Positions 10,126 through 63,227 of a stretch of 64,000 bases of DNA are shown here, piece after piece; the first letter of the stretch is position 1; each line of letters opens with the position of its first letter. This stretch comes from Mizuhopecten yessoensis (taxonomy: Eukaryota). The stretch is from the NCBI RefSeq assembly GCF_002113885.1, contig NW_018403537.1, forward strand, positions 4,025 to 68,024, read 5' to 3'. Both the position numbers and the translations under genes were made by a program. The notes beneath the pieces are model-generated. The model made no database searches, was not told where the DNA came from, and saw only the letters and a program-made list of their open reading frames with translations.

Positions 10126-12277
10126 TTTTGAAGACTCGTTAGCATTTGTAGCCGTTTGTCACCTCACAGTGCTAGCCTTATCGTTGATGGCGGTGAAATG
10201 ATCTACTACGGTGTTACAGCGAAACAGATGTCTATATCTTATATAACCTGAGGATTTTACGGGTGAATGTATTGATTTTAATTTGAAATTGATGGATACT
10301 CCACAGCCTTGTATATATCATTATTTGTCCGTGCTGTCGTCACTGCTAATAAGTCCATCGGCGATCACACATTCATTAACAGTAAATTGGAAATTGTGTG
10401 TTTTATAATAACTATGGATTGCCGAACAATCTTGACGCTATTACGAGTTTTCAGCACGGGCGGGGAATATATCAGCCCTGTCACGTTGTCACAGTAAACA
10501 GGTCTGTGCCGTACAGCGGACCCAGCACACTCACAGCGTAAATGGCGGAGGGGCACATATAACCATGTATTACTCTGTTCGGTGTCATTACGGCTTGAGA
10601 TCTGTCGGTTGAAATAGTTAATCGTTTTAACTGCCAAGAAAAATACATAAAATCAATTAATGGGTTTTTGGAGAAATTATTTTGTGCTGCTGTGTAGTTC
10701 AATAGTCAGTGGCTATAAAGAGTGTTTAATGAATCCACGTCTACCTCAGTATTGAAATTCGTCTTCACACTTGATTTTTTTTTATTACTTTTCGGCAATG
10801 ATTGAAAATCATGCAATCGTACGGTAACCATGAATTGATTAGCATGTTACCTGTATGAGGTAAGTGATACATTGTATTTCCACAACGTCCTTTTTCTTCG
10901 AATTGAAAATAAATAACTTTTGAACGAGTACATTTGATTGAAAATTATTTTATGCGAAAATGTGGTTGATATTAATCAATTTTAATTGACAAAAGTAATT
11001 TATGAATAACATGACTTTGCAAGATTCTGCTATTTGACAGATGCCCGATTTCGATAGGTATATGTGCTTCATGTGTAGTACCAGACAGACACCGCCTGTT
11101 ATATATACCTTTCTAAAATAAAGCTAATAAGAAACTATCTTAAACCTTTGGCTTCAAGTTTAAAATCCCAAGGCAAACGACGTTCATTGCAAAAATAGAC
11201 TCTCACGGTTAATTTATTACTTAAATTCAAAATAACAGAAGGTCTGATAAATTATGAAAATTGTACCATAACTAAAAAACAAATCAGTTGGAAATATTCA
11301 TTTAACGTGGATGCTAAGGATAACTTTAGATTCCGGTTCAATGCCAATTTGAAATGAAAATGGTAAGAAAGCACGCATTCCAACCGATGTAGAGCAAAGG
11401 GAGGTGACTCCATAAATGTACAAAATATATTTTTAATATTAGTTGATTCGTTACATTAACATTTTTTTTTTAACTCTTTTAAGGTGTGCGTATACTTTCC
11501 AAATCAAGCGACAAGGTGCAGAGAGTTTCGCACGTAGCTCAGTTTTAAAATGATTTACGGTAATATTTCAATGCAAGTCTGAAGAGTGTTTTCAAACTCC
11601 CGTAAATAAGAGCGGAAGTCATTTGCACCGGAAGTTCACCGTCGCAGCTGATGACAGCTTTATGGCAGCTGCTGATGATAAAGTCTGTAAATTTGTTATC
11701 AATTTGATATAAAAATATCAATATTGCATCCTCCAATGAAATATAGCTCTCTTTTCATTTCAATACGCATTTTCTATATTTTATTTCAACAATGTGAACG
11801 GTTAAAAACCAATATATTTCAATATATGTGGGGGCTTTATTCATTATTTTTCTCCTGATATCTAAAAAAATAAAATGCATGGTAAATTCACTTCGAAAAT
11901 ATAAATATGTTTTCAAGAATTCCAATTAATACCTCAGATTTCATTGCTTTTCTCTCAAGATTCCAAGTTCGGTTTCATATTTAGAATCTAATATTAGTTT
12001 ATTTAATGATTCCAGATATATAATTCCCGTGTTATGAATAACCTCCTTCTTCCTCAATTCTGCTCTGACCATAGTATTCCATGATTTGCATTTCTTCCTG
12101 GATTAAGATTGAACAGCATAAGTCACCTTCATTGAAAATTCCTTTTAATACTTTTTTCAGTACAGTACATGGCCCGTCGAACTTTAACTTATCCATACAA
12201 TTCCAATAAATTGCATCAATATAAAGTAAATAAGATATGGTCAATTATATTTTTAAATAATATATTTTCTATATTTT

Positions 12278-13190
12278 ATGTCTGTTGACACTCATGTGAC
12301 CTTTGGTCTGGTGGATGGTGTGTCGGACTGTTGTAATGTGTAGTGAATGTCTGTGGTGTATATAACCTGTGTAATAGTGGAAGATGTGTCGGACTGTGGT
12401 AACTTGTAGTGTATGTCTGTGTTATATATAAGTTGTGGTCTTGTGGATGGTGTGTCGGACTGGTGTAATTTGAAGTGTATGTCTGTGGTGTATGTGACTT
12501 GTGGTCTGATGGATGGTGTGTCGGACTGGTGTAATTTGAAGTGTATGTCTGTGGTGTATGTGACTTGTGGTCTAGTGGATGGGGTGTCATACAGTTGGAA
12601 TGTGAAGTGTATATCTCTGGAGTATGTGCCTTGTGGTCTGGAAAATGGTGTGTCGGACTGCTGTAATGTGTAGTGTATGTCTCTGGTGTATGTGACTTGT
12701 GGTCTGGTTGATGGTGTGTCGGACTGGTGTAATGTGTAGTGTATGTCTGTGGTGTATCTGACTTGTGGTCTGGTTTATGGTGCGTCGGACTGGTGTAATG
12801 TGTAGTGTATGTCTGTGGTGTATGTGACTTGTGGTCTGATGGATTGTGTGTCGGACTGGTGTAATGAATGTCTGTGGTGTATGTGACTTGTGGTCTGGTG
12901 GATAGTGTGTCGGACTGGTGGAATGTGTAGTGGATGTCTGTGGTGTATGTGACTTGTGGTCTGGTGGATGGTGTGTCGGACTGCTGTAATGTGTAGCGTA
13001 TGTCTGTGGTGTATGTGACTTGTGGTCTGGTGGATAGTGGGTGGGACTGGTGTAATGTGTAGTGTATGTCTGTGGGGTATGTGACTTGTGGTCTGGTGGA
13101 TAGTGTGTCGGGCTGGTGTAATGTGTAGTGTATGTCTGTGGTGTATGTGACTTGTGGTCTGAATATTGTAATGTGTAGTGTATATTTCTG
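12278..13190. repeat. 66-bp GT-rich minisatellite, ~13 copies
   Basis: Unit GTGTAGTGTATGTCTGTGGTGTATGTGACTTGTGGTCTGGTGGATGGTGTGTCGGACTGGTGTAAT; the minus strand reads as 22-aa repeats HPPDHKSHTPQTYTTHYTSPTH. Confidence 0.95.
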
Positions 13191-13864
13191 TTGTATATAT
13201 GGCCCACCTAGTGTAAGTGTTGTTCATTATTTATTAGGTTTGACCTATTTATATCATACCGATTTTACTCATTTCTTTTCGTATAAGTATCACCCGTTCC
13301 CTAAACTTCTAGCACAAGATGTATATTCCTAAAATTGTATTCGCCGATGTAGGTATGGAAGCATGTCAACATAATTACTATTTCTGATGTTTGTATTTAC
13401 ACCAAGCTAACGTCTAATTAAGCTTTGTTCCTGTTAACTGTGGGGTTTTTTTCTCAATCGATCCTGTTTGAATGAAAAATACAGCTAAGTTGATGAATCG
13501 ACTGGTTATCGTATATGGTGTATGTTATGTTATAGATAGATAACACTCCCTTGTCTGTTACTGCTACTACAATGCAGTGCGAATGTTTTCGCACATCTAT
13601 TTCAATATAGCTGGCAATGGTATATTTATTGATGATGATGTGCAAGGTTGATGGTTTGATAGTTTCAAACTCCAACGAAATACTTTCGAATCTGTAAACC
13701 ACTTCCAGCAAATATCCAAAGTCAATTAGCACATTAGCAGAAGCAAGAGCATCCCTAAGGAGCTACAATGTATTCCACATTTATCTCAATCTAGCCGGAA
13801 TAAGGCGAACTTTGATATCTGATCGATCACCGGGAGCTGTGAAACACTTAGAGAAAAAGTCGGA

Positions 13865-14600
13865 AAGCAATACCACAATGCGTGGGGCTGAGGAGTCAAA
13901 CAAATACGTGCAGTACGTGAGCTCTGGTGTAAAGCAATAGCATACGGTACTCAGGGCCGAAGGTACTGCATGACACACAGTACATGGTGTCAGGGAATAA
14001 AGCAATGACACACGGCCCGTGGTGCCGGGAAATAGAGCAAGCACACAGTATTTTGCAGCTAAGGAATACAGCAATAATACAGAGGACGTGGAGCCGGAAG
14101 TACAGCAATTACACACAGTACTTGGGGCCGTCGGGAGCAGCAAGAACACACTATACATGAGTTGCATTGGGCTGATGAGTAGGAGAGCAATGCGACACAG
14201 TACATGGAGCCAGGGAAAACAATAATAACACAGAAATCGTGGAGCCGGAAGTACAGCAATGACACACAGTACTTGGGGCCGTCGGGAGCAGCAATAACAC
14301 GCTGTAGTCGAGGCTAGGAGTAAGAGGGCAATGACACACAGTACTTGGGGCCGTCGGGAGCAGCAATAACACACTGTAGTCGAAGCTAGGAGTAAGAGGG
14401 CAATAACACACAGTACATGGAGCCAGGAAATACAACCATAATTCAGAAAACGTGGAGCCGGAAGTACAACAATGACACACAGTAAAAAGAAACAGCGATT
14501 CGGAATTCAACAATCACACCCTGTACGTGGTGCCAGGGAGTAAGAGAGCAATGATACAGAGTACGTAGGGTCCATGAGTACAGTATATTACACACAGTGC
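13865..14600. repeat. Mosaic tandem repeat of ~35-bp related modules
   Basis: Recurrent modules starting GCAAT(G/A)ACAC, e.g. ...ACAGTACTTGGGGCCGTCGGGAGCA (x3), ...CGTGGAGCCGGAAGTACA (x3) and ...GCTAGGAGTAAGAGGG (x2). Confidence 0.85.
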
Positions 14601-14852
14601 GACGGACAGAATGCTTAAGAGGTCACATCACACACACACAAACGTCAACATGGCCCAGACACAGATGACATTAACATATCAGGGGACCACATACTCGTCG
14701 TACCATTTACACAGTAAACGGGTGATGGATGAAAGAAATGTCAAAAGTGAGAGGACTACTGACACAGATGTGGGTTATGTGAGGATACGAGACCAACGGC
14801 AATGTAAGTAGGGGGTGGGTGGCTGGGGTGGAGGACAGAGGGCGACACACAT

Positions 14853-17522
14853 ATGATGCTGGGATAACAGAGGGCCAATGCCCTCAATATAACGGTGCTG
14901 GAGGACAGAGGGACTATAACTCTTGTCTGTATATAACGGTGCTGGAGGACAAAGGGACTATAACTCTTGTCTGTATATAGCGGTGCTGGAGGACAGAAGG
15001 ACTATATCTCTTGTCTGTATATAACGGTGCTGGATGACAGAAGGACTATAACTCATGTCTGTATATAACTGTGCTGGAGAACAGAAGGACTATAACTCTT
15101 GTCTGTATATAGCGGTCCTGGAGGACAGAAGGACAATAACTCATGTATGTATATAACGGTGCTGGACGACAGAAGGACTATAACTCTTGTCTGTATATAA
15201 CGGTTCTGGAGGACAGAGGGACTATAACTCTTGTTTGTATATAACTTGATGCTGGGATAACAGAGGGCCAATGCCCTCAATATAACGGTGCTGGAGGACA
15301 GAGGGACTATAACTCTTGTTTGTATATAACTTGATGCTGGGATAACAGAGGGCCAATGCCCTCAATATAACGGTGCTGGAGGACAGAGGGACTATAACTC
15401 TTGGCTGTATATAACGGTGCTGGACGACAGAAGGACTATAACCCTTGTCTGTATATAACTGTGCTGGACGACAGAAGGACTATAACCCCTGTCTGTATAT
15501 AACGGTGCTGGAGGACAGAGGGACTATAACTCTTGTCTGTATATAACAGTGCTGGAGGACAGAGGGACTATAACTCTTGTTTGTATATAACTTGATGCTG
15601 GGATAACAGAGGGCCAATGCCCTCAATATAACGGTGCTGGAGGACAGTGGGACTATAACTCTTGTCTGTATATAACGGTTCTGGAGGACAGAGGGACTAT
15701 AACTCTTGTTTGTATATAACTGTGCTGGAGGACAGAAGGAATATAACTCTTGTCTGTATATAACGGTGCTGGTGGACAGAAGGACTATAACTCTTGTCTG
15801 TATATAGCGGTCCTGGAGGACAGAAGGACTATAACTCATGTATGTATATAACGGTGCTGGAGGACAGAGGGACTATAACTCTTGTTTGTATATAACTTGA
15901 TGCTGGGATAACAGAGGGCCAATGCCCTCAATATAACGGTGCTGGAGGACAGAGGGACTATAACGCTTGTCTGTATATAACGGTGCTGGAGGACAAAAGG
16001 ACTATAACTCTTGTCTGTATATAACGGGGCTGGAGGACAAAGGGACTATAACTCTTGTCGGTATATAGCGGTGCTGGAGGACAGAAGGACTATATCTCAT
16101 GTCTGTATATAACGGTGCTGGAGGACAGAGGGACTATTACTCTTGTCTGTATATAACGGTGCTGGAGGACAAAGGGACTATAACTCTTGTCTGTATATAG
16201 CGGTGCTGGAGGACAGAAGGACTATATCTCTTGTCTGTATATAACGGTGCTGGATGACAGAAGGACTATAACTCATGTCTGTATATAACGATGCTGGAAG
16301 ACAGAAGGACTATAACTCATGTCTGTATATAACGGGGCTTGAGGACAGAAGGACTATAACTCTTGTCTGTATATAACGGTGTTGGACGACAGAAGGACTA
16401 TAACTCTTGTCTGTATATAACTGTGCTGGAGGACAGAAGGACTATAACTCTTGTCTGTATATAACGGTGCTGGGGGTCAGAGGGACTATAACTCTTGTCT
16501 GTATATAACGGGGCTGGAGGACAAAGGGACTATAACTCTTGTCTGTATATAACGGTGCTGGACGACAGAAGGACTATAACTCTTGTCTGTATATAACGGG
16601 GCTGGAGGACAAAGGGACTATAACTCTTGTCTGTATATAGCGGTGCTGGAGGACAGAAGGACTATAACTCTTGTCTGTATATAACGATGCTGGAAGACAG
16701 AAGGACTATAACTCATGTCTGTATATAACGGTGCTGGAGGACAGAGGGACTATAACTCTTGTCTGTATATAACGGTGCTGGAGGACAGAAGGACTATAAC
16801 TCATGTCTGTATATAACGATGCTCGGGGACAGAAGGACTATAACTAATGTCTGTATATAACGGTGCTGGAGGACAGAAGGACTATAACTCATGTCTGTAT
16901 ATAACGGTGCTGGACGACAGAAGGACTATAACCCTTGTCTGTATATAACTGTGCTGGAGGACAGAAGGACTATAACCCCTGTATGTATATAACGGTGCTG
17001 GAGGACAGAGGGACTATAACTCTTGTCTGTATATAAAGGTGCTGGACGACAGAAGGACTATAACTCTTGTCTGTATATAACGGAGCTGGAGGACAGAAGG
17101 ACTATAACTCTTGTCTGTATATAACGGTGCTGGCGGACAGAAGGACTATAACTCTTGTCTGTATATAACGATGCTGGAGGACAGAGGGACTATAACTCTT
17201 GTCTGTATATAACGGTGCTGGGGGACAGAGGGACTATAACTCTTGTCTGTATATAACGGTGCTGGACGACAGAAGGACTATAACTCTTGCCTGTATATAA
17301 CTGTGCTGGAGGACAGAAGGACTATAACCCCTGTCTGTATATAACGGTGCTGGAGGACAGAGGGACTATAACTTTTGTCTGTATATAACGGTGCTGGAGG
17401 ACAGAATGACTATAACTCTTGTCTGTATATAACGGTGATGGACGACAGAAGGACTATAACTCTTGCCTGTATATAACTGTGCTGGAGGACAGAAGGACTA
17501 TAACTCTTGTCTGTATATAACT
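14853..17522. repeat. 44-bp minisatellite, ~60 copies, with an interspersed variant unit
   Basis: Unit TATAACGGTGCTGGAGGACAGA(A/G)GGACTATAACTCTTGTCTGTA. The variant TGATGCTGGGATAACAGAGGGCCAATGCCCTCAA occurs five times, all in the left part. Confidence 0.97.
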
Positions 17523-18512
17523 GAGGACACGAATGAAACTCATTATACATTGGACTAGGAGGGCAGAGGACAAAGGAAGCGCCGTATGAGGAACGTGAAA
17601 GATAGAAGGCTATTTACACATGGTACATGGGACGGGGAAGCAGGTCAAGGATAGAGGAAAACACATATTGAAATATATCATTTAAAGGAAAAATAAATTA
17701 AAAGTTGCGTCCCTTGGATTTCAAGGTGTTTTTTATATATATTTTCCTGTTTTAAAAGAAAAAAGAAAAAATGAAACAGGGACAGTAGAACGAACATTTT
17801 AACGTGTTTTGATATAGTATGCTGCAAACGTCTTTACTGATGGCTTAAAGCTATGTAAAAACAAAACGACTTTTTATTTGAACAAATAGGGAATTTTTAC
17901 TTCAGTCTCAACGTACACAGTCTATTAATTCTCTTAAACACATTCGTTAATTTAAGATAATCCAACAAAGTTCACAGATAGCGTTTTTGAGTAAATGAAT
18001 ATTGTGACAGCTAAGTACGATTATCCAGTAGCCTGTACAATTTGTGTATTATATCAACACTGTTCTTTTGAACATAATTCCGCAAACGGTGTTCAGAACA
18101 ATTTTAGGACAAGAAAATAAGCAACGTTCTTAATGTATTTAAAAAAAAATATGTTTTGCCTTAATTTGTAATGTAAAGTTTTATAATAAAAAGGTTTATC
18201 CTTGCGCCAGGCCAATAACATTTATACATGCTTCGTGTCTATCAAAACAGTCTGACAGGTACGTTTACAAATAGTTAGATATTTTAAACGTAAAACGATT
18301 AAGTTACACTTTTCTGTAATAGATGATTATTTTTCACTATTTAAATTGTATATGACAAGGACATCGGAGAAAGTGAACGCTTAACATAGACAGTAATCCG
18401 ATACTTACGCTTCGGGATCGACTGCCTTTCTATGTAATCCTGGTTGTCTACTGACCGTTGTGTGTTATGTACCCCGACATCTGAGACGGCCACCCACTGA
18501 AGGTCTTACTCT

Positions 18513-18584
18513 GTCAATTACGTGTATTCTCAAGCAATAACAACGAAAAATTGTATTATCAACCTAAGAATACCCGTAGTCGAC
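18513..18584 (-). ncRNA. mir-137: microRNA mir-137 precursor hairpin
   Basis: Minus strand reads GTCGACT-ACGGGTATTCTTAGGTTGATAAT-ACAATTTTTCGTTG-TTATTGCTTGAGAATACACGTAA-TTGAC. The 3p arm (18518-18540) matches the invertebrate miR-137 sequence I recall (UAUUGCUUGAGAAUACACGUA). The 5p arm (18555-18577) matches the miR-137 star arm. The arms pair, and CNNC (CTTC, 18499-18502) lies 16-17 nt downstream. Confidence 0.96.
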
Positions 18585-18794
18585 TAAGTGGTTCTCTTGG
18601 TGGTTTGGCGAATCCGGATTTTTGACATGTAACTTCTGAATCCGTGAATAGCTCTGCAGATTTCCGACAAACGTGGTATGAAGCAAGACCACTAATGCCA
18701 AGTGGTCAGCGACTGTATACGCTGTGATGGTCAGTGCCAGTTAAACAGTGATGGACACGTCTGATGACAACTGGAGATGAGCTTTGTAAAGGTG

Positions 18795-18950
18795 TCGTTG
18801 ATTGGAATTTGATGCTAATGACCACACTATGGGACGAGAGAACGTGATGACAAGTCCCCACGCCCTCCCGCCGCACGTGTGGCCGCTCAGGGGCGTGGTC
18901 CAGTCTCGCACCTGTGCAGGTAACCCAGGTAACGGAGCGCCAGGTAGCGA
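18795..18950 (-). promoter_or_regulatory. Candidate promoter or proximal enhancer of the mir-137 primary transcript
   Basis: GC-rich island 220-370 bp upstream of the hairpin. Contains CCAAT (18801-18805, minus), KLF/Sp boxes CCCCACGCCC (18856-18865) and GGGGCGTGG (18890-18898), E-boxes CACGTG (18874) and CACCTG (18909), and three CAGGTA (18917, 18926, 18941). Confidence 0.5.
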
Positions 18951-20696
18951 ACAACACCTCTGGGTTCATCATCGACCACTATGTACACATACAAAGAGAT
19001 ATACTTCAATAGCTATATTAATTAACAAAAAGAAGTCTTCAACACGTGATAACTGAAATTATGATTCCAAAAATACATAACAATGCTACGAACCAATGAT
19101 AAAGGAAACGAAAAAAGGGACAACGAGAAAGAAAACGTGAAGCTGGAGATAGTTATACTTGTGGTGCCACAGATCGTGCATTTTAAGGATCAATTTAATT
19201 TCTAAAAAGAAAAAACCCCGCTGTCTCGTGTAATTCTAGTGATTTTGTTTTTTAACAGTTTTCCCGAAAGAATTTCAAATCTGATCTCATTTGTATTTCA
19301 CGAAACTTAACAAACAATCTAAACATTATATCATTTATATATCAGAATGATCGTAAAAACATGGTTGTATAACGTGCAATATACATGTCGTATCAATATC
19401 AGGATGAAGCGGACCTTCTCGCTGTCTTGCATTACATAAAACTGCATTCGGATCTATGCGCTAAGGATAACATTGAACATGATAAATTTATATACCTGTT
19501 TAAAAATACACTAAGTGGTGATTTAGTTTATGCATATGCCTACCAAATATTGTTATTGGCATATTGTTATATAATTTATACTTTTGAATTCAAACAGAAT
19601 TTGTACAATTGCAAATTAAATTTTTCGATTTTTTTATGTAACCTTCATGAAACTTTAAGAAATTATAAATTCAGTAACAAAAATATTTGCTTATAAAAAT
19701 ATTTCATTCGTTTATTTAACTTGACAATAAAATACGACAATTTTTCTTGTGATGAAATAGATTCTTTTATTGAAACGTTAAGAATATAGACCATGCGTCC
19801 ACTTGAATATATATTTTTATGCAGTCGACAGTTTTATACTACAGAGAAAGCAAGATATCTTTTCTATAATTAATGAAAGGGTTGAAATTCAAACGCAAAT
19901 TTTGAGAAGTAAAGATTGAGTTTGCGCAGTATCGTATCAATAAAACAATGTATGAAGTTGCGAGAAACAGACAAGCAGTTTTACCAAAAACAACTGACGA
20001 AGAATTTGTTACAACGAAAATAAATGTCTTCTAGATGTATACAAGGTGAAAGTTGAGAAAGAAATCAATTATTGATGTAGTTTTAACTAAAATCCTATGG
20101 ACTTAAAAAAGAGAGAAGCTTACAGAAGTGATCTTGTTTCTTCCTTATATTTATAAAACATGCAATATTGTTACAAAGACACCCGATACTGCCTGGCCGC
20201 ACAACGGGCTGTCAGAAGAAAATACCTTTAGATCCTAGATCTCCGCCACGGCAGCCCCAGACTAATATACCAGAGTAGATGAAGGACTCGTCCACAATAG
20301 TCTAGAATTAGCACACTAGATTCCGACTTGAGGCATCCTGGATACTAGACTCCACCACTATGTCAATTTGTCATCAGCCGTAGCCGTGCATTGTTGCACA
20401 CAACATCATCGGATCAGCTCGGCAGGCAGAGCACGTGACTGAAGTGACGGGGGATGCGACACTCTCCTACATTGACACACGCACGACTTCCCCTATTGAT
20501 CCGTACCAAGTATACAGCATTGTTCTTTCTATTCTCAATGTACGCTTTGAAGCTTTTCTGCCGTATGGCCATGGATAAATGATGATGAATTTGACTCGGG
20601 GAAAGCAACTCATTCCTGTGTGTGACAGTTCAGTAATATCACCACCTTGTGGCGGTTACGGAGGCTAGACCGTCATAACTCGATACGTATATAACC

Positions 20697-21797
20697 GCTA
20701 GATACCTGCCTGAACGCTAGATACCTGTCTGACAGCTAGACACCTGTCTGATTGCTAGATACCTGCCTGACAGCTAGATATCTGTCTAAACGCTAGACAC
20801 CTGTCTGATTGCTAGATACCTGCCTGACAGCTAGACACCTATATTACCAGTAGACTTCTGTCTGAACGCTAGATATCTGTCTGACTGCAAGATACATGTC
20901 TGAAAGCTAGATACCTGTCTGAACGCTAGATACCTGTCTGATTGCTAGCCACCTGTCTGATTGCAAGATCCCTGTCTGATTGCTAGACCCCTGTCTGATT
21001 GCTAGATACCTGTCTGAACTCTAGATTCCTGTCTGAACGCTAGATCCCTGTCTGATTGCTAGACACCTGTCTGATTGCTAGATACCTGTCTGAACTCTAG
21101 ATACCTGTCTGAACGCTAGATACCTGCCTGACAGCTAGACACCTGTATTACCAGTAGACTTCTGTCTGAACGCTAGATATCAGTCTGACTGCAAGATACC
21201 TGTCTGAAAGCTAGATACCTGTCTGAACGCTAGATACCTGTCTGATTGCTAGACACCTGTATTACCAGTAGACTTCTGTCTGAAAGCTAGATACCTGTCT
21301 GAACGCTAGATACCTGTCTGATTGCTAGACACCTGTCTGATTGCTAGATACCTGTCTGATTGCTAGACACCTGTCTGATTGCTAGATACCTGTCTGAACG
21401 CTAGATACCTGTCTGAACACTAGATACCTGCCTGACAGCTAGACACCTGTATTACCAGTAGACTTCTGTCTGAACGCTAGATATCTGTCTGACTGCAAGA
21501 TACCTGTCTGAAAGCTAGATACCTGTCTGAACGCTAGATACCTGTCTGATTGCTAGACACCTGTATTACCAGTAGACTTCTGTCTGAAAGCTAGATACCT
21601 GGTCGAACGCTAGATACATGTCTGATAGCTAGACACCTGTCTGATTGCTAGATACCTGCCTGACAGCTAGACACCTGTCTGATTGCTAGATACCTGTCTG
21701 ATTGCTAGACACCTGTCTGATTGCTAGATACCTGTCTGAACGCTAGATACCTGTCTGAACGCTAGATACCTGTCTGATTGCTAGATACCTGTCTGAC
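20697..21797. repeat. ~19-bp minisatellite, ~58 copies
   Basis: Unit GCTAGA(T/C)ACCTGTCTGA(TT/AC). The variant block ATTACCAGTAGACTTCTG recurs five times, giving higher-order structure. Confidence 0.95.
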
Positions 21798-23108
21798 TAG
21801 TACTGATAGAATCTTGGTTGACCGCTTGATACTTGTATGACTGAAAGATACAGTAGAAAAGGCAATTTGTATATATATTCGACAATTTGTACCATTCTAC
21901 CATAAGGCGTAAAAGGTCTACTGTCCGATGTAGAAATAAAAGGGTTGAGTGTGCCATTCGACCTCAATATAATCAGAATACACCAATTGCGTTGATTTGC
22001 TGATGTTTTGAAACAAGGATCCTCTTGCAACTGACTGTAACAGTCCTGAAATATTTCTGTCTTTCAAAATCATATTCTAGAAAAAATAAGATGAATGTTA
22101 AAATTTCAGGACAATTTTGTCCAGGGAAACGTTTTTAAGTGTGAAATCTTTTCTACAGAATAACATTTTCAGAACAGTATAAATTATGCTGATGTGAGGT
22201 GACAGTCAAAAGTCTAATGTCACCACGTTGTTAACGTCTTGCTGGATTGTCACAAAATGTTTGTTCTCCATACCATACCTTGAAAACCGTTAAGTTTTCA
22301 TAATGACACTTGAAACCGCATTACGCGCAGACGCCATGCAATGTACCAGAGTTAGGTAATTTCCGTATCTTTTGTAACTTAGCGCAATAGGTTGCTCCAT
22401 TAAAAGCGAGTTTACACAAGTAATTAAATAGGAAGTGATGGGTCGGGATAGTGAAGACTAACATGGGGAAAGATGTTGGGGACCGGCTTCACGTACAGGT
22501 TGATGAAGATGTTGGTGACGTATGTCGATCCTCTCAACCCTTGTCGAACGTCATGCCGAGGACACATTTATTTGGCGAACCAATCATGCCGGACACATTT
22601 TGAAGGATGCAATAATACAGCGCCCCCGGAGGGACATGTTCATTCCGCTAGCAGGGGTCTTCAAACAACACACAATAAACCCCGTATTGATGTGTTTGAT
22701 GTTTGATATTTTGGTCAATATTTGAAGAAAAAAAAAATCAAAGTGTTTTACAAAATGTAATGGTCTAACGGGTCATGACTCTGGAAAAGAGATCGAAATT
22801 ATACCTCCAATATATATTCCGGGAAGATAATCTGTTGCATTAACTTTTTATGGCTTGAATTTGACATTGTTCTCCGTCTTATATCTAGGTTAGTATATTG
22901 ATTATACAATAAAGAATGGAATATTAATTTCTTGACATTGATTGGTTTCTTTGCCGTGTCATAAATTGTAATAAAAGTGTACCACAAATGTATTTCTAAC
23001 ATCGGGTTTCTCGATGTGTTTGTTTTAGTAAACATGAAGCAGGAATTAAGAGGGCTGTTAACATGTAGGTTCCCGAAAACGATATCAGGAAACATAGGTG
23101 CAACGAAT

Positions 23109-24670
23109 TACCTAGAGACAAAAAACTACCTAGAGACAACATATCATGCCTGATGTCGACATCAATCTACCAAGAGACAACACCATCATGCCTATTAACG
23201 ACACAAAACGACCTAGTGACGATATCATCATTCCTAGTGACTACACCAAACTACCTAGTGACGACATCATCAAACCGATTGACGACACCAAAACACCAAG
23301 AGACGGCATCATCATGACAAGTGACGACACCAAACCATCTAGAGACAACATCATCATGCCTAGCGACGACACCAATTACCTAGTGACGACATCATCATGC
23401 CTAGTAAGGACACCAAACCATCTAGTGACGTCATCATCGTGACTAGAGAAGACACCAAACTACCTAGAGACAACATCACCCTGCCTAGTAACGACACCAA
23501 ACTACCTATAGACAACATCATCATGCCTAGTAAGGACACCAAACTACCTAGTGACGACATCATCCTGACTAGAGAAGACACCAAACTACTTAGAAACAAC
23601 ATCATCATGCCTAGCGACAACACCAAACTACTTAGAAACAACATCATCATGCCTAGTAACGACACCAAACTACCTAGAGATAAGATCATCATGCCTAGTA
23701 ACGACACCAAACTACCTAGAGACAATGCAGCATGCCTAGTGACGACACAAAACTTCAATGTACTTAGTGACGACCCACCCTACCTAGAGACGACACCATC
23801 ATACCATGTGACGACACCACGCTGCCTAGTGATGACACCAAGCTTCAATGTTCCTAGTGATGACCCCACCCTACCTAGAAACGGCATCATCAAGCCTGGT
23901 GACGACACCTAACAACAATGTACCTAGAGACATCAAACTACCTAGTGACGAAATCAAACTACCTAGTGACGACCCCATCCTTCCTGTAGACGACACCACA
24001 TTGCCTATTGTTGACACCACCATTCCAAGTGATGACATTCCTAACTACCTAGTGACGATACCAAACTACTTAGTGACGATACCACATTGCCTAGTAACGA
24101 AAACAAACGACCTAACTATGACACCGCCATGCCAAGGGATGACACCAAACTACTACGTGACGGTGTCCCACCTAGATCCATTACGAAACATCCATGTGAC
24201 GACACCACGCTGCCTAGTGATGACATAAAACTACATGTTAAAGTCATCACAATTCTTAGTGATGACGTCAAGCTACCTAGTGACGACAATATCCTTCCTA
24301 GTGACGACACCAAACTACCTAGGGACGACACCATCATGCCTCGTGATGAGCCCAGACTACCTAAACGACACCGCCCTGCCTAGTTACGTTACTGAACAAC
24401 CGAGTGACGACACCAAACTACCTAGTGAGGACAAAATCTGCCTAGTTACAACACCAAACTACCTAGCAACGACACCATCCTGCCTAGTTAAATTACTAAA
24501 CAACCGAGTGACGACACCAAACTATCTAGTGACGACAAAATCTGCCTAGTTACAACACCAAACTCCCTAGCGACTACGCCACCCTGCCTAGTTACAACAC
24601 CAAACAACCTAGTGATGACAATACCCTTATTAAATACAACACCAAACTACTATTGACGATATCATCTTTC
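23109..24670. repeat. Degenerate 21-bp minisatellite (42-bp dimer)
   Basis: Units CCTAGTGACGACACCAAACTA and CCTAGAGACAACATCATCATG translate as PSDDTKL and PRDNIIM repeats across several shifting frames. Confidence 0.9.
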
Positions 24671-27600
24671 TTACTCTAACAAAGTACGGAACCAACATAC
24701 AGAGTGGCGACCTACTACGTAATGAAAACACTTAGTTTTCAAATGAGAACAAGCTGAACTGTGACAATACCGACCCAACAAAAAAACACTGACTTATACA
24801 GTGACATGGTCTGGATAGTTTCGAAAACTGACCTATATTATCGCATTGCATGATTGCAAGATACCAAAGTCCATTACGGGACTCCTTGTAGAATCAGGGA
24901 TATTTTCCTGTGCAATCGTCTCGGGGACTTAAATACTTCTTTTTCTTTGTTATTCACCTACTATTTCCTTTCGGCGGTGTCTAAGTACCCTTTTGCTTGA
25001 CCATGGTGAGACTCTTTCTTGCTACCTTTTTAAATTTTGCTCTCGGTGACATGGCTCGTTAGAATGAGCCTGGTTGAAATTTTTGCTCCAAACACTAGAG
25101 CTGTTGTGATAACACAAAACAAAGAACCTGCCCAATGACGAAACCGGCTTACTTAGTTACGGCTTCAACAAAAATGTGATGACTCTAACATACCTTGTTA
25201 ATACTACAACCAATCACGTGAAGTCCCCAACCTTATATTACTTGTCGACACAAATCAGCTTAGGGACGAAAACAAACTACATCAAACTGCCTGTATTGAC
25301 AATAAATACGTACCGTGTGTTACCGCGTGGTTACACATATACAACAATAACAACAACAACAAACAGTTATTTCATTTTTGGCAGCAGCATACTTTGTCGC
25401 TGTGGACAATGACTCTGACAATGTACTGAACGTACTTGCACAAATGCATTGAAATGCTTGGCGTAATGTGAAGCGGTTTAACAAATATGTGTGCAGCACC
25501 TTGTTAAAACAATGCTGGAATATGTACAAAACTAAACACTGTGAACTGATATCACCGTCATCTGCCATTTATATTTACCATCATTCCTCTTCATATTTTT
25601 ATCTTCATTACAAAATAAATCGTGGTGCACCAGATCAATGCCATTGTACCGTTTACATTTATTACTATGGAAACACTATATATCAACTAGCGATATCGGT
25701 GTCCAGATAACAAGCACCCAATGATGAACTAAACATCTGTGAACAAGCAAATAAAGCGATTCTGACCTACAATTGACAAGGTCTGTCCCGCCAGTGATGG
25801 TCGGCAAAACGACGATAATTGCTCAATGGACGGACGGACTGTAGCCATCAAACACACACTCCACCACATGCTTTGCCTAATTAGTAATAAGCCATATACG
25901 AGAAAAACGTTGTCTCGACCCGAATGAGTCTCAGCATTGCACTAGAGTTGTCTTATATGGTGTAATTTGTCAGCGTAAATGGCTTTATATGCTGATGTGA
26001 TGTCTGCATCCATCAAGAAATCGAAAACACCTGTTAAAATATTCATGATGTGTTTTATCATTGCGAGCCCATGGGTATTGGGGAAGGCCTGTATCGAAGG
26101 CCTTGTATTGGCACTTTTATGACGAGTGACCCAGATGTCGAGCTGTGACACCCGCCTCTACTACATGTGGTGTGTAAACACAGTGATGTGTCCGTTTATT
26201 GGTGACGTCAGCGCGGTCAGTACTACATATGTACCGATTACGAATATTTAGATCTTACCATGCGATACATGTACTTGACTGAAGTCCGAATTAATATGGC
26301 ATAAAACTGACTCATTTGTAGAAACAAAATAGCGGTGCAACTTAACATCATGCATACATGACTCAAATGTCATTATGTTACCTCGTTGCGTGGCTCTGGT
26401 GATAAACATATTCCCCTTTTCATAAACTGATCATTCGTCCCGTGTGTCCCATACAATCGCCCTCCTGTACGCACCTCGCTTATTTTGTCGCAAGTGAAGG
26501 CAATAATTTGCTTGTTTTAATATCATTTCATACGTACACACTACTGAACATCAAATTATAACAGCCCAAGGTACCATGGTATAGATTTTTTGATGAGTTA
26601 TTGCCCGGCTACGCCAGGCAGGTTTTCGCGCCATCAATTGTGACGTCCAGAATTGTATTTACACCTCAAATCCATGTCATCGCTCCGACATGCTTTCTTT
26701 GTGGTTGGGTTTTATGAATGGTTATGGCGGCGATGACGACATTGTAATTTCGAAGGTCTGTATGATTGATTTATTTATAAATTTTCAGAGATTGAAGCAC
26801 GACAGTTACATAACTTCGAGAACCTTAGAATGGGTACTGCCGCTAAATGTCACAGCGCACTGTGATAGCATATAACCTATATTGTGTAACACTACCCAAC
26901 AGAAAGACGGTCGTACATGTCGCGACAATCTCATCAACGTCAATGAATGGACGTTTTATATTTCTGAGAGTCGCCGATACTAATTTGCTTTGCGTACGGT
27001 GATTGTCAATTTGATACCTTCCTGAAACTTTGACCTCGCTTCTATGCCCGATAGCATGTCCTGTGGCCATTTAGTACTGTGGTTTCAACTTGATTTAAAT
27101 GACATTTATAACTGAGTAATCTTACGTATTACTCTATATACCAAATCGAATCAGTCTACTTTTATGAATATAAAAACCATGAACACATGTTTTTTTTAGT
27201 GACAAAAGGATCTTTACACATTTTTTCATATTTGTAAACGATCGTTTGACCTCGTGACCTGGTTAAGCGGAGACAGCGGTACACAGAATATAGCTGGAAT
27301 TACTGATCATGGCGACAAACGTTTATGGTGTAATATCGACGGACCTCACACTTTCGTGTGTTTTATTTTGATAAATGGCGAATATTAACCATATATATGG
27401 TAGAATGCTCCTTCGTAATGTTCTTGGTCGATATGAAAGACACCATGCTCTGTCATACTCTTGTCTATCGTACCGTCACAGCAGCCTGTCAACTGTCCGG
27501 CTATCTAAAAATAGATTTAGTCAAGGATGACATATACATATTCATATATTAAAACAGCAAATAAAACACAAATACTAAATGTTACTCTGACCAGCATTAA

Positions 27601-28652: not shown

Positions 28653-28797
28653 AATAGAATCCATAAGGTTATTCAAACCCTCGGGATAAAATATTGAGCA
28701 AAAGACCCTTGGCAAAGCCTCAGGTCTCCTGCTCAATATGTTATCCCTTGGCATTGAATAACCTTATCTATACCTCACATTAGGGATGGATTCTATT
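28653..28797. mobile_element. Palindromic non-autonomous element head (hairpin 1)
   Basis: Outer arms AATAGAATCCAT / ATGGATTCTATT, inner arms ATAAGGTTATTCAA...ATATTGAGCA / TGCTCAATAT...TTGAATAACCTTAT, centre GGCAAAGCC (28711-28719). Confidence 0.75.
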
Positions 28798-28864: not shown

Positions 28865-30972
28865 ATATGATCTATGTAGCAGAATGTGAAATCGTCGGTT
28901 CATTGTAATCCGGATTAGCGCGGATATACTTGTTGAATCGACAACGTCAGACTTTTATGTGCGCAGCAGCCTTTTCATCCAGTTCTATTTTCCGATCATT
29001 TGCTGTCATTAATTGTAAAGGTTCCAGAGACCGCCTCATATTTATAGTAAACATGTTGATATATATCGTGGTTAGACCAACGCATCTTAAAGAATAATAG
29101 CTCGAATTATTGACGACCTTATTATGGCACTATTTTTGTGCTGGTATACTTTTTTCTCATATCCGGTCATGTAAGATAACGCTGACCATGTAAGATAACG
29201 CTGACCATGTAATATAACGCTGACCATGTAAGATAACGCTGATCATGTAAGATAACTCTGGCCATGTAAGATAACGCTGATCATGTAAGATAACGCTGGC
29301 CATGGAAGATAACGCTGGCCATGTAAGATAACGCTGACCAAGTAATATAACACTGACCATGTAAGATAACGCTGATCATGTAAGATAACTCTGGCCATGT
29401 AAGATAACGCTGATCATGTAAGATAACTCTGGCCATGTAAGATAACGCTGACCATGTAAGATGACGCTGACCATGTAAGATAACACTGACCATCTAAGAT
29501 AACGCTGACCATGTAAGATAACGCTGGCCATGTTAGATAACGCTGACCATGTAAGATAACGCTGACCAAGTAAGATAACGCTGACCATGTAAGATAACGC
29601 TGGCCATGGAAGATAACGCTGGCCATGTAAGATAACGCTGACCATGTAATATAACGCTGACCATGTAAGATAACGCTGACCATGTAATATAACACTGACC
29701 ATGTGAGATAACGCTGATCATGTAAGATAACTCTGACCATGTAAGATAATGCTGACCATGTAAGATAACGCTGATCATGTAAGATACCGCTGACCATGTA
29801 AGATAACGCTGATCATGTAAGATAACTCTGGCCATGTAAGATAACGCTGATCATGTAAGATAACTCTGACCATGTAAGATATGATCTATGTAGCAGAATG
29901 TGAAATCGTCGGTTCATTGTAATCCGGATTAGCGCGGATATACTTGTTGAATCGACAACGTCAGACTTTTATGTGCGCAGCAGCCTTTTTATCCAGTTCT
30001 ATTTTCCGATCATTTGCTGTCATTAATTGTAAAGGTTCCAGAGACCGCCTCATATTTATAGTAAACATGTTGATATATATCGTGGTTAGACCAACGCATC
30101 TTAAAGAATAATAGCTCGAATTATTGACGACCTTATTATGGCACTATTTTTGTGCTGGTATACTTTTTTCTCATATCCGGTCATGTAAGATAATGCTGAC
30201 CATGTAAGATAACGCTGATCATGTAAGATAACTCTGGCCATGTAAGATAACGCTGACCATGTAAGATGACGCTGACCATGTAAGATAACACTGACCATCT
30301 AAGATAACGCTGACCATGTAAGATAACGCTGGCAATGTAAGATAACGCTGACAATGTAAGATAACGCTGACCATGTAAGATAACACTGACCTTGTAAGAT
30401 AACGCTGACCATGTAAGATAACGCTGCCCATGTAAGATAACGCTGGCCATGTAAGATAACGCTGACCATGTAATATAACACTGACCATGTAAGATAACGC
30501 TGATCATGTAAGATAACTCTGACCATGTAAGATAATGCTGACCATGTAAGATAACGCTGATCATGTAAGATAACGCTGGCCATGTAAGATAACGCTGACC
30601 AAGTAAGATAACGCTGACCATGTAAGATGACGCTGGCCATGTAAGATAACGCTGACCAAGTAAGATAACGCTGACCATGTAAGATGACGCTGGCCATGTA
30701 AGATAACGCTGGCCATGTAAGATAACGCTGGCTATGTAAGATAACACTGACAATGTAAGATAACACTAACCATGTAAGATAACACTGACCATGTAAGATA
30801 ACACTGACCATGTAAGATAACGCTGACCATGTAAGATAACGCTGATCATGTAAGATAACGCTGACCATGTAAGATAACGCTGACCATGTAAGATAACGCT
30901 GACTATGTAAGATAACTCTGACCATGTAAGATAACGCTGACCATGTAAGATAACACTGACCATGTAAGATAA
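28865..30972. repeat. Tandem duplication (period 1014 bp) of a ~300-bp spacer plus a 19-bp minisatellite array
   Basis: The spacer ATATGATCTATGTAGCAG...CTCATATCCGG starts at 28865 and again at 29879, near-identical. Each copy is followed by an array of TAAGATAACGCTGACCATG (29167-29880 and 30181-30972). Confidence 0.95.
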
Positions 30973-31829
30973 CAGGCCAATGAAAAGGTTTGTTACAAGC
31001 AAGATTAAATTATAACAGAATTACTGAACAAAATAAAGTTCGTTGATGACATGGATGGATAGTTATAGTACATGCTTGCTTCATTTGTAGTATCACATCT
31101 AAAGTGGGACCAATGTACGATTTCCCTGAATCCATTTATAATACTCGTTTTTGTTATCTCTACTGGTGCTGAGGGAATATAATTAGACGTTTTAAGGCGT
31201 TGATCAACTTTTGTTAAAAACAATCCTCAAATTTCACCCAGCCCTTCTCGCCTGTTGAGTGACGTTGACGTTAAAGAAACCACCAAGTGCCCAAAAAGCA
31301 CACCTTAAAAACCCAGGATTTTCGGATGACGTCGATTTCGGAAAAAATACATATTTTTATTGCGGGAATTCATTTTACGAAGTATTACTCTAATCCCGTT
31401 AAACACCTAATAATACATCCTACACTTCAGCCGAAGTCTAAACATTCGCACCGTTATCTAATGTTTAGGCCCTTGTGGGTTTTCAGAAATGAAGAAAGCA
31501 CTACGTACGTTTCAAACGAAATGAAATAGCTACCATGCGTATAACCAGCCAATCACAATTGGCGCTATAACCAAGAATTGTTTCTCCTCAAAATCAATCA
31601 ATGGAAATAAAATACGATCTCCTTTGCCTGTCATTAATGAAGATGATTAGGACACTAAAATAAATATTTGAGGATCGTTGCCAACAAGAATCGCGGTTTG
31701 TCTCAACTAGGGTCACATTACACACTAACAATTATTTGTCGTTTTGTTTTCTTTGATATATATGGGATTTCCGTCGGAGTTTTGTTTCATACCCGGTTTT
31801 TATGCATGTGTCAGCAACAAAGCTTGCAG

Positions 31830-32651: not shown

Positions 32652-32997
32652 TAAGGATTAACTTGAATATATTTTTTATGTTATTGAGATATAACACAAA
32701 AAATCGGAGTGTACTCTAAATAAACCGCGAAGCGCTTTATGATGAGAGTACACTCCGGTTTTTTGTGTTATAACTCCATAACATGAAAAATATATTCAAG
32801 TTAATCCTTATAATTTTATCTACTATACACAATCCCTGTGGAAATCCACTTTTATTGAGGGACTCTTTTCTCTTGGAAATTATTGCGCTGCAGTATCAGC
32901 CAATCAAAACCAACGTTACAAACGGCGACGTCATATTTTACGTTATGGACTGATAACATAAATGTTTAAGCCAATGTTACAAGCAAGATTAAATTAT
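32652..32997 (+). mobile_element. Palindromic non-autonomous element (hairpin 2, 32652-32810, plus body and tail)
   Basis: ~66-bp inverted arms TAAGGATTAACTTGAATATATTTT...GGAGTGTACTCT / AGAGTACACTCC...TCAAGTTAATCCTTA, centre GCGAAGC (32727-32733), tail TGTTACAAGCAAGATTAAATTAT. Confidence 0.8.
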
Positions 32998-34871: not shown

Positions 34872-35027
34872 AAGGATTGACCTTGATTTTGACGGCGTAT
34901 ACGGTAGTATGAACGCAGTTGGCAACGAACATATTATTTATGGAGCGCTAACGCACACCATAGAATACGTTCGTTGGCAACTGTGTTCATTCTACCTTAT
35001 ACGCCGTAAAAATCAAGGTCAATCCTT
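34872..35027. mobile_element. Palindromic non-autonomous element (hairpin 3)
   Basis: ~64-bp inverted arms AAGGATTGACCTTGATTTTGACGGCGTATA... / ...TATACGCCGTAAAAATCAAGGTCAATCCTT, centre GCGCTAACGC. Confidence 0.8.
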
Positions 35028-62590: not shown

Positions 62591-63227
62591 CATGCTATAT
62601 ATAGAGTAAGTAAACATTAGGTGTACCAAGCGAGACACGGTAATAAAACAACATCAACAGGGTAAGAAAGGAAACATATTTCAGTCTGCAACGTTAGCAG
62701 TATTGGTTTTGTTTTTGCGACATCTTCTCAGAAGAGTATGGTGAGGTAAACCTCATAATATGTCGTTAACGCCATGTTATTGGCCTGATACGACCACATA
62801 AACAGTAAGGTAGTCATGGCCAGTTGTATTCCCCTGAGCCAAAAAGAGATCCAGACAATCATGTCGATCATTATTAACAACGTAACACGCAGTTAATAAC
62901 ATTTTTTAATGTAAAACATTAATATTGTCGTATTAGTACCCTGCTGACAGAGTCATAGCACCCATTACATACAATGTGTTATGAACGCACATTTAATAAA
63001 ACTTAGCTGAACTACGATTGGCTGTAGGTTCAGGACTACTCTTTCAGTTGTGATTGTTATACATACTTCCATTTTCATTTTGACGTCACAAAAGATGAAT
63101 GTTGGACACTCAAATGGTGATATACAGAAAAGTCATGATTTAAAACTGTAGCTCGCCAGTGGCTTGCTCAATTTATATAATTCTAATAAATTCTATGAAA
63201 TCTAAATATATGTACGATTATCCATTT

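What the first reader, a model, noticed from the sequence alone, without database searches (positions are those of the whole stretch)
18499..18584. mir-137 is the only recognisable gene in 64 kb and is invisible to the ORF track
Seen: a complete hairpin with canonical 3p and star arms and a CNNC motif at +16/17. Established: miR-137 is a conserved, neurally enriched bilaterian miRNA. Inference: the window is the regulatory gene desert of mir-137 and the locus may be unannotated in this genome. The family itself is known, not new.
Basis: partly seen in the sequence, partly recalled or inferred. Interest (0 to 1): 0.7.

Follow-up and report, generated by a model that had tools for sequence, protein, structure and literature searches.

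The report
Ordinary mir-137 microRNA gene, gene-poor surroundings
The stretch is a genuine, single-copy copy of the ancient animal microRNA gene mir-137 in a gene-poor, repeat-rich part of what is probably a scallop genome; this is a correct but ordinary finding.

Summary
Window 18513-18584 (minus strand) matches the Rfam mir-137 model end to end at 81.3 bits, against a gathering score of 56.7 (E = 1.7e-16).

- **Mature arm:** 22 of 22 bases match the Lymnaea miR-137 assay target.
- **Processing geometry:** the proposed arms leave a 2-nt 3' overhang at the Drosha end. A CNNC motif starts at +16, and 22 of 25 distinct mir-137 loci that I fetched from other animals have one at +16 to +18.
- **Copy number:** the locus is single copy. 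The only other match in the genome is a 2.6-kb contig that is 97.6% identical, probably the other allele.
- **Rest of the 64 kb:** no other Rfam family reaches its threshold and there is no tRNA. None of the 150 longest non-repeat reading frames reaches a Pfam threshold. The window is mostly minisatellites and transposon-like repeats.

Expression of the small RNA could not be tested, and neither could the annotation status of the locus.

Two things were not in the finding. A cDNA contig shows a polyadenylated plus-strand transcript (18690-19073) next to the hairpin. A second single-copy hairpin that folds well only on the minus strand lies about 230 nt upstream of mir-137 (about 18815-18885). 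It could be an undescribed clustered microRNA, but no reads or conservation support this.

Verdict: an already known family and an ordinary orthologue, of low interest.

The parts
18513..18584 (-). mir-137 precursor hairpin (full match to the Rfam model)
   Evidence: RF00694 at 81.3 bits against a gathering score of 56.7, model positions 1-72. Fold z = -4.0. Single copy plus one allelic contig.
18518..18540 (-). Predicted mature miR-137-3p (guide arm). The 5' end is at 18540 or 18539.
   Evidence: 18540-18519 is identical to the 22-nt Lymnaea Lym-miR-137 TaqMan target (PMC5834643). It matches 21 of 22 bases of cte-miR-137 (PMC8044141). The arm is invariant in alignment A2, although most of that is by construction of the search word.
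18555..18577 (-). Predicted miR-137-5p (star arm)
   Evidence: It pairs with the 3p arm, and 18577:18520 gives a 2-nt 3' overhang. The 5p core is invariant across 20 loci that were not selected for it.
18499..18502 (-). CNNC motif (CUUC) starting 16 nt downstream of the predicted Drosha cut
   Evidence: 22 of 25 distinct mir-137 loci from other animals have a CNNC starting at +16 to +18.
18503..18512 (-). 3' side of the basal stem extension and single-stranded flank of the pri-miRNA
   Evidence: The minimum-energy fold extends pairing below the Drosha cut. The basal stem pairs that could be compared lie just inside the model match (18581-18584 with 18513-18516), and three of those four show compensatory changes across species.
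18585..18600 (-). 5' side of the basal stem extension and flank
   Evidence: The two haplotypes show no difference across 18487-18600.
18815..18885 (-). Second hairpin ('hairpin B'), single copy and strand-specific: a candidate clustered miRNA or a palindromic promoter element. Whether it belongs to the mir-137 gene is uncertain.
   Evidence: Minus strand -48.2 kcal/mol, z = -3.9; plus strand -37.3, z = -1.1. Single copy. No Rfam family. Not found at other animals' mir-137 loci.
18690..19073 (+). Unspliced polyadenylated transcript on the opposite strand, starting 106 nt from the hairpin base and antisense to hairpin B
   Evidence: Contig of run X20 at word depth 74. It has a template-switch-oligo tail before 18690 and 18 A after 19073. 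Three of its four differences from the reference are listed, and all three are differences of the allelic contig. Its 75-aa ORF has no homologue.

Best explanation
Window 18513-18584 (minus strand) is the single-copy orthologue of the conserved bilaterian microRNA gene mir-137, in a roughly 988-Mb invertebrate genome. Notes by other agents call the genome the Yesso scallop; I did not test that.

How it most likely works; all of these steps are inferred, none was observed:
1. An RNA polymerase II primary transcript is read from high to low coordinates.
2. It folds into the hairpin.
3. The Microprocessor, helped by the CNNC motif at +16, cuts about 11 bp above the basal junction, at 18577/18578 and 18518/17.
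4. Dicer removes the short apical loop.
5. The 3p arm (UUAUUGCUUGAGAAUACACGUA...) is loaded into Argonaute. It represses mRNAs that carry matches to its seed (UAUUGCU, or AUUGCUU if the 5' end lies one base further in).

The surrounding 64 kb has no recognisable protein-coding or other RNA gene. It consists largely of minisatellites and transposon-derived repeats.
For: - **Model match:** full-length covariance-model match 24.6 bits above the curated threshold, on one strand only.
- **Mature arm:** identical over 22 nt to the sequence used to measure Lym-miR-137 in snail ganglia, and one terminal base away from cte-miR-137.
- **Geometry:** the hairpin is stable, and the proposed arms leave a 2-nt 3' overhang at the Drosha end.
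- **Comparison with other animals:** 20 mir-137 hairpins were aligned. The 5p core was not part of the search word and is invariant. Three basal-stem pairs show compensatory double changes.
- **CNNC:** it starts at +16 here, and at +16 to +18 in 22 of 25 distinct loci.
- **Copy number:** only two places in the 988-Mb assembly match. The second is a 2,620-bp contig that is 97.6% identical along its whole length, so probably the other allele. The hairpin is identical in both; there is no difference across 18487-18600.
- **Family status:** mir-137 is listed among the conserved bilaterian, protostome and lophotrochozoan families (PMC3840308).
Against: - **No expression evidence:** the one raw-read RNA run laid on the locus gave 0 reads, which is no test. 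No small-RNA library was available.
- **Haplotype identity is weak evidence:** a difference-free 114 bp is expected about 1 time in 9 at the local rate.
- **Alignment bias:** the invariance of the 3p arm is largely forced by the exact-word search that fetched the loci.
- **Missing motifs:** there is no basal UG at -14, and no apical UGU at the 5' side of the loop.
Confidence: 0.93

Rival explanations
1. The hairpin is a mir-137 copy that is intact in sequence but no longer expressed or processed: a silent relic stranded among minisatellites.
For: No RNA read or contig covers 18026-18689 in the RNA-like runs that were laid. The locus lies between large tandem arrays.
Against: It is the only copy in the assembly apart from its allele, so the family would otherwise be lost. 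The mature arm, the star arm, the basal pairing and the CNNC position are all intact, and the hairpin scores as high as the best loci from other animals. Missing reads are uninformative, because there were no small-RNA libraries and 0 reads of X23 mapped anywhere on the stretch.
Confidence: 0.04
2. The hairpin is a chance or repeat-derived palindrome that merely resembles mir-137.
For: The window holds several strong hairpins that are transposon-like repeats and that gave weak miRNA-family hits (mir-2763, MIR7533).
Against: E = 1.7e-16 with full model coverage. The 19-nt core is expected 0.03 times in the window by chance. The locus is single copy, unlike the repeat hairpins, which have at least 40 scored copies each. 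The basal stem shows compensatory changes against orthologues.
Confidence: 0.01
3. mir-137 is not alone. It is the downstream member of a two-hairpin cluster, and the upstream hairpin B (about 18815-18885, minus strand) gives a lineage-specific, undescribed miRNA from the same primary transcript.
For: - **Fold:** hairpin B has about 32 bp of stem, -48.2 kcal/mol, z = -3.9 on the minus strand, but z = -1.1 on the plus strand.
- **Strand specificity:** all 7 wobble pairs have G in the 5' arm and U in the 3' arm, so the fold works only on mir-137's strand. This is my own count on the fold. It gives roughly p = 0.016 if the changes were strand-blind transitions in an old palindrome.
- **Copy number:** single copy.
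- **Rarity:** only four places in the 64 kb hold a 90-nt single-stem hairpin at or below -42 kcal/mol, and the other three are multi-copy palindromes that fold on both strands.
Against: - **No reads, family or paper:** there are no reads, no Rfam family, and no paper holds either arm sequence.
- **No conservation:** there is no similar sequence and no consistently placed hairpin upstream of mir-137 in 25 loci of other animals. The closest one, L053, has a minisatellite there instead.
- **Shape:** the apical loop is tiny and there is no CNNC at +16 to +18.
- **Polymorphism:** the one haplotype difference in the stem (18864) changes G:U to C·U and is not compensated.
- **Other readings:** the only transcript seen over it is antisense. 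The GC-rich palindrome with a central CACGTG could instead be a promoter element.
Confidence: 0.15

Closest known systems
Rfam RF00694 / MirGeneDB Mir-137: invertebrate mir-137 (Lymnaea Lym-miR-137, Capitella cte-miR-137, Drosophila and other insect miR-137)
   Same: Full-length model match. The mature arm is identical to the Lymnaea assay target over 22 nt and to cte-miR-137 over 21 of 22. The 5p core is the same, the basal stem is compensated, and the CNNC sits at +16 as in most loci fetched from other animals.
   Different: Only the last base or two of the 3p arm differ (…CGUAAU here, …CGUAG in Capitella), along with the lineage-specific loop and basal stem sequence. The metagenome locus L053 shares the …CGUAAUUGAC ending.
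Vertebrate MIR137 in its host gene MIR137HG, with neighbouring MIR2682, in a gene-poor region next to DPYD (from my own knowledge, not checked here)
   Same: The family is the same. Both lie in gene-poor surroundings, and both may have a second hairpin close by on the same strand.
   Different: The vertebrate mature sequence differs at two internal positions (from memory). Hairpin B matches no Rfam family, at an E-value limit of 10. The Fer4_20 (DPYD-type) domain matches lie on other scaffolds, not on C210. No host transcript on the miRNA strand was seen.
Transposon-derived long hairpins of this genome (window 28665-28770, 32685-32790, 34890-35010)
   Same: They are stable hairpins that give weak hits to miRNA families.
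   Different: They are multi-copy, with at least 40 scored copies each, and they fold equally well on both strands. mir-137 and hairpin B are single copy.

Membership tests
mir-137 (Rfam RF00694 / MirGeneDB Mir-137) | Covariance-model score at or above the curated gathering score, over the whole model | tested here: met
   81.3 bits against 56.7, model positions 1-72 of 72, minus strand. The plus strand scores 42.2 bits, below threshold.
mir-137 (Rfam RF00694 / MirGeneDB Mir-137) | Mature 3p arm with the family seed (UAUUGCU / AUUGCUU) and near-identical full length | tested here: met
   18540-18519 equals the 22-nt Lym-miR-137 assay target. 21 of 22 bases match cte-miR-137.
mir-137 (Rfam RF00694 / MirGeneDB Mir-137) | Hairpin whose arms form a duplex with 2-nt 3' overhangs (Drosha and Dicer signature) | tested here: met
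   In silico only. The overhang is 2 nt at the Drosha end. It is 2 nt at the Dicer end if the 3p arm starts at 18539, and 1 nt if it starts at 18540.
mir-137 (Rfam RF00694 / MirGeneDB Mir-137) | Structure conserved with orthologues, with compensatory change outside the duplex | tested here: met
   In 20 aligned loci the duplex pairs are invariant and 3 basal-stem pairs keep pairing through double changes.
mir-137 (Rfam RF00694 / MirGeneDB Mir-137) | Downstream CNNC processing motif at about +16 to +18 | tested here: met
   It starts at +16 here. 22 of 25 distinct loci have one at +16 to +18. The motif is common to many animal pri-miRNAs and does not define this family.
mir-137 (Rfam RF00694 / MirGeneDB Mir-137) | Small-RNA reads from both arms with a homogeneous 5' end (the expression criterion of MirGeneDB) | not testable with these tools
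   No small-RNA run was offered. The raw RNA run X23 gave 0 reads on the stretch, which is no test.
mir-137 (Rfam RF00694 / MirGeneDB Mir-137) | Unique, non-repeat genomic locus | tested here: met
   There are two places in 988 Mb, and the second is a 97.6%-identical allelic contig.
Clustered novel miRNA (hairpin B, 18815-18885, minus strand) | Stable, strand-specific, single-copy hairpin of pri-miRNA dimensions on the strand of the neighbouring miRNA | tested here: met
Clustered novel miRNA (hairpin B, 18815-18885, minus strand) | Conservation in related species, or small-RNA reads from both arms | tested here: inconclusive
   It was not found beside mir-137 in distant animals. No close relative's genome and no small-RNA data were available.

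The most novel reading that the evidence does not exclude
In this bivalve, mir-137 is the downstream member of a two-hairpin cluster. The second hairpin, about 230 nt upstream (about 18815-18885, minus strand), is single copy and folds well only on that strand. It would be an undescribed lineage-specific microRNA, overlapped in antisense by a polyadenylated transcript (18690-19073, plus strand) that could modulate its production.
Probability: 0.15. Interest if true: 0.3.

Novelty: already known. Interest (0 to 1): 0.12.

Why it matters
It matters little beyond annotation. The report gives exact coordinates, strand, arms and predicted cut sites for the single mir-137 gene of this genome, and these can go straight into a miRNA annotation.

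It also shows that the CNNC motif at +16 is kept at mir-137 loci across several invertebrate lineages. miR-137 acts in memory formation in a snail, through CREB2 (PMC5834643). It has also been linked to shell colour in a clam (PMC8044141). A mapped locus therefore helps anyone who studies it in scallops.

The neighbouring strand-specific hairpin and the antisense transcript are cheap to test with one small-RNA library.

Tried and rejected
1. **Protein-coding content of the window.** I scanned the 150 longest non-repeat stop-to-stop frames (63-241 aa) against Pfam. The only hits were two sub-threshold UbiA matches (21.8 and 19.4 bits against a cut-off of 34.2), one DUF3915 and one Atrophin-1. 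The two UbiA frames are the two arms of one inverted repeat (58276-58712 and 59967-60402), so they are not independent and not a gene.
2. **Weak Rfam hits.** The mir-2763 hit (34909-34990) and the MIR7533 hit (28664-28766) lie in multi-copy palindromic repeats.
3. **Synteny with DPYD, as in vertebrates.** The Fer4_20 domain matches lie on other scaffolds, not on C210. This is uninformative without a chromosome-level assembly.
4. **RNA evidence.** The raw-read run X23 gave 0 reads. The contigs of X19 cover 17530-18025 and 20187-20492 at low depth; their strand is unknown and X19 is only guessed to be RNA. They could be pieces of the primary transcript, but that cannot be shown.
5. **The 75-codon ORF of the plus-strand transcript.** It has no homologue by word search. 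The Atlas was busy. Of its three haplotype differences, one is silent and two change the residue. I treat it as non-coding.
6. **Hairpin B at other mir-137 loci.** I found no sequence similarity and no consistently placed hairpin. No paper holds its arm sequences.
7. **Papers on miR-137 in this species.** None was found in the library. This is not evidence that the locus is unannotated.
8. **Operators' rules.** None of the fetched contigs looked human; all carry the invertebrate form of the mature arm. No run of N was filled in.

Full report
**1. The observation**

A scan of the whole 64-kb window against Rfam at gathering thresholds gives exactly one match. It is RF00694 (mir-137) at 18513-18584 on the minus strand. 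It covers model positions 1-72 of 72 at 81.3 bits, against a gathering score of 56.7, with E = 1.7e-16.

The reverse orientation scores 42.2 bits, below threshold, so the strand is clear. The 121-nt minus-strand stretch around it folds into one long hairpin of -36.8 kcal/mol, with z = -4.0, and none of 200 shuffles folds as well.

- The arms are 3p 18518-18540 and 5p 18555-18577.
- Position 18577 pairs with 18520, so the 3p arm overhangs by 2 nt at the Drosha end.
- At the Dicer end the overhang is 2 nt if the guide starts at 18539 (the UAUUGC… form), and 1 nt if it starts at 18540 (the UUAUUGC… form).
- A CNNC motif (CUUC, 18502-18499) starts 16 nt after the 3p end. This explains the finding's start coordinate.
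- There is no basal UG at -14.

**2. Identity**

The 22 bases at 18540-18519 equal the target sequence of the assay used to quantify Lym-miR-137 in Lymnaea ganglia (PMC5834643). They differ from cte-miR-137, as listed in a clam study, only at the terminal base (PMC8044141). mir-137 is counted among the conserved bilaterian, protostome and lophotrochozoan families (PMC3840308).

To compare the hairpin with independent loci I searched metagenome contigs for the 21-nt invertebrate mature word, which catches host DNA. This returned 40 contigs. Of the 20 I scanned, 17 pass the mir-137 gathering score and none carries any other Rfam family.

I then aligned 20 distinct hairpins, the window's among them:
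- The 5p core was not part of the search word and is invariant.
- All duplex pairs are kept.
- Three basal-stem pairs keep pairing through changes on both sides.

A CNNC starts at +16 to +18 in 22 of 25 distinct downstream flanks. The motif in the window is therefore a conserved feature of this gene, not a coincidence. Many of those loci come from related hosts, so the count overstates independence. At least half a dozen clearly different hairpin types are represented.

**3. Copy number and genome**

The window is position 4025-68024 of a 1.84-Mb scaffold (C210), in an assembly of 987.6 Mb and 82,659 contigs. The family model finds only two places in the genome: this one, and a 2,620-bp contig that aligns to window 17479-20077 at 97.6% identity along its whole length. 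I read that contig as the other allele.

The hairpin is identical in both haplotypes, with no difference across 18487-18600. At about 1.9 differences per 100 bp, that is only weak evidence of constraint.

Notes by other agents on this genome call it the Yesso scallop. The assembly size fits my memory of that assembly. I did not test this, and the run labels are coded.

**4. The rest of the window**

No other Rfam family reaches its threshold, and there is no tRNA.

The window is rich in minisatellites. Examples are a 44-mer repeated 60 times at 14887-17521, a 19-mer repeated 58 times at 20696-21796, a 19-mer repeated 94 times at 29168-30973, and a 25-mer repeated 92 times at 60297-62591. All bacterial-style ORFs of 120 aa or more lie in or beside these arrays.

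Outside the repeats the longest open frame is 140 aa. None of the 150 longest frames reaches a Pfam cut-off. The two weak UbiA hits come from the two arms of one inverted repeat.

In the next 100 kb of the scaffold, the ten longest frames give only a DDE_Tnp_4 transposase and a reverse-transcriptase fragment.

So 'no other recognisable gene' holds at this sensitivity, although short exons would be missed. That the desert is regulatory is not shown by anything here. The first 4 kb of the scaffold are mostly a run of N, which I left alone.

**5. Expression**

No small-RNA library was offered. The one raw-read RNA run gave no read on 17530-20690, which is no test.

A contig of run X20 covers 18690-19073 at word depth 74:
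- Before 18690 it carries a tail that I recognise, from my own knowledge, as a SMART template-switch oligo ending in GGG. After 19073 it carries 18 A.
- It is therefore a cDNA of a plus-strand, unspliced, polyadenylated RNA of about 384 nt.
- Three of its four differences from the reference are listed, and all three are differences of the allelic contig, so it comes from this locus.
- The stretch is single copy.
- Its 75-codon ORF has no homologue.
- I saw no canonical poly(A) signal, and the genome is A-rich just after the end. Internal priming on a longer RNA cannot be excluded.

The transcript starts 106 nt from the base of the mir-137 hairpin and runs away from it. It is therefore either divergent from a shared promoter or antisense to the 5' part of the pri-miRNA.

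**6. A second hairpin**

I slid 90-nt folds over the unique 3 kb and then over the whole window. Only four places have a single-stem hairpin at or below -42 kcal/mol.

Three of them (near 28670, 32690 and 34900) fold on both strands and are multi-copy repeats, each with at least 40 scored copies.

The fourth, about 18815-18885 on the minus strand, differs:
- It is single copy.
- It folds to -48.2 kcal/mol (z = -3.9) on the minus strand, but only to z = -1.1 on the plus strand.
- The reason is that all seven wobble pairs have G in the 5' arm and U in the 3' arm.
- It lies about 230 nt upstream of mir-137 on the same strand and has roughly pri-miRNA dimensions, with about 32 bp of stem.

Against a miRNA reading:
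- It has a 4-nt apical loop and no CNNC at +16 to +18.
- No Rfam family matches it, and no paper holds its arm sequences.
- An uncompensated polymorphism lies in the stem (18864).
- No counterpart was found next to mir-137 in the loci from other animals. The most similar of these, L053, has a minisatellite there instead.
- The segment is GC-rich with a central CACGTG, so it may equally be a promoter palindrome.

I give the clustered-miRNA reading about 15%.

**7. Mechanism**

Shown here: sequence, fold, cut-site geometry in silico, conservation, and copy number.

Inferred from established miRNA biology:
- Polymerase II transcribes the locus on the minus strand.
- The Microprocessor cleaves at 18577/18578 and 18518/17, aided by the CNNC.
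- Dicer cleaves near 18555 and 18540.
- The 3p arm is loaded into Argonaute.
- Seed-matched mRNAs are repressed.

In a snail the validated target is CREB2, and the miRNA is needed for long-term memory. Whether that holds here is untested.

**8. Verdict**

This is a correct identification of a known, deeply conserved miRNA gene. It is an ordinary orthologue in a repeat-rich, gene-poor stretch. Novelty class: already known. Interest is low. The only loose ends worth a look are hairpin B and the plus-strand transcript.

Noticed in passing
window 18690-19073 (+): A cDNA contig of run X20 (word depth 74) has a template-switch-oligo tail at its 5' end and a poly(A) tail. It marks an unspliced plus-strand transcript of about 384 nt that starts 106 nt from the mir-137 hairpin. 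The stretch is single copy, and its 75-codon ORF has no homologue. I saw no canonical poly(A) signal, so internal priming is possible.
   Followed up: partly
window 18815-18885 (-): A single-copy hairpin folds well only on the minus strand (-48.2 kcal/mol, with 7 G:U pairs all in one orientation). It lies about 230 nt upstream of mir-137 on the same strand, inside the plus-strand transcript. It contains a central CACGTG. It is a candidate clustered miRNA or a promoter palindrome.
   Followed up: partly
window 34890-35010, 32685-32790, 28665-28770: Three near-perfect long palindromic hairpins; the one at 34890-35010 folds to -71.5 kcal/mol over 121 nt. Each has at least 40 scored copies and hundreds of candidates in the genome. 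They probably belong to the hairpin-ended mobile elements that other agents described in this genome. Two of them caused weak hits to miRNA families.
   Followed up: partly
window 58276-58712 and 59967-60402: An inverted repeat of about 437 nt (93-96% complementary) with a 1,254-nt spacer. Its outer parts are made of a 25-mer minisatellite, which continues as 92 copies up to 62591. The hydrophobic translation of both arms gives spurious sub-threshold UbiA hits.
   Followed up: partly
window 12000-18000 and 20000-26000: GC skew is strongly positive (+0.2 to +0.3) on the low-coordinate side of mir-137 and negative (-0.07 to -0.19) on the other side. The skew coincides with different minisatellite arrays. 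No large inverted repeat links the two sides.
   Followed up: partly
window 17895-18486 versus 18487-20077: Haplotype divergence is very uneven: 42 differing alignment columns in about 590 bp just downstream of the hairpin, against 20 in the 1,590 bp from the hairpin upstream. One stretch, 19230-19824, has none in 594 bp.
   Followed up: no
L053:1-330: In the metagenome-derived mir-137 locus most like the window, which shares the …CGTAATTGAC flank, a roughly 21-nt minisatellite abuts the hairpin on its upstream side. mir-137 sitting among minisatellites may therefore not be peculiar to this genome.
   Followed up: no
L021, L035, L043 (marine metagenome contigs): These loci carry the exact miR-137-3p word but a divergent 5p arm. 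L035 and L043 were scanned and do not reach the Rfam gathering score; L021, which has the same hairpin sequence, was not scanned. They may be a divergent mir-137 of an unidentified marine animal.
   Followed up: no
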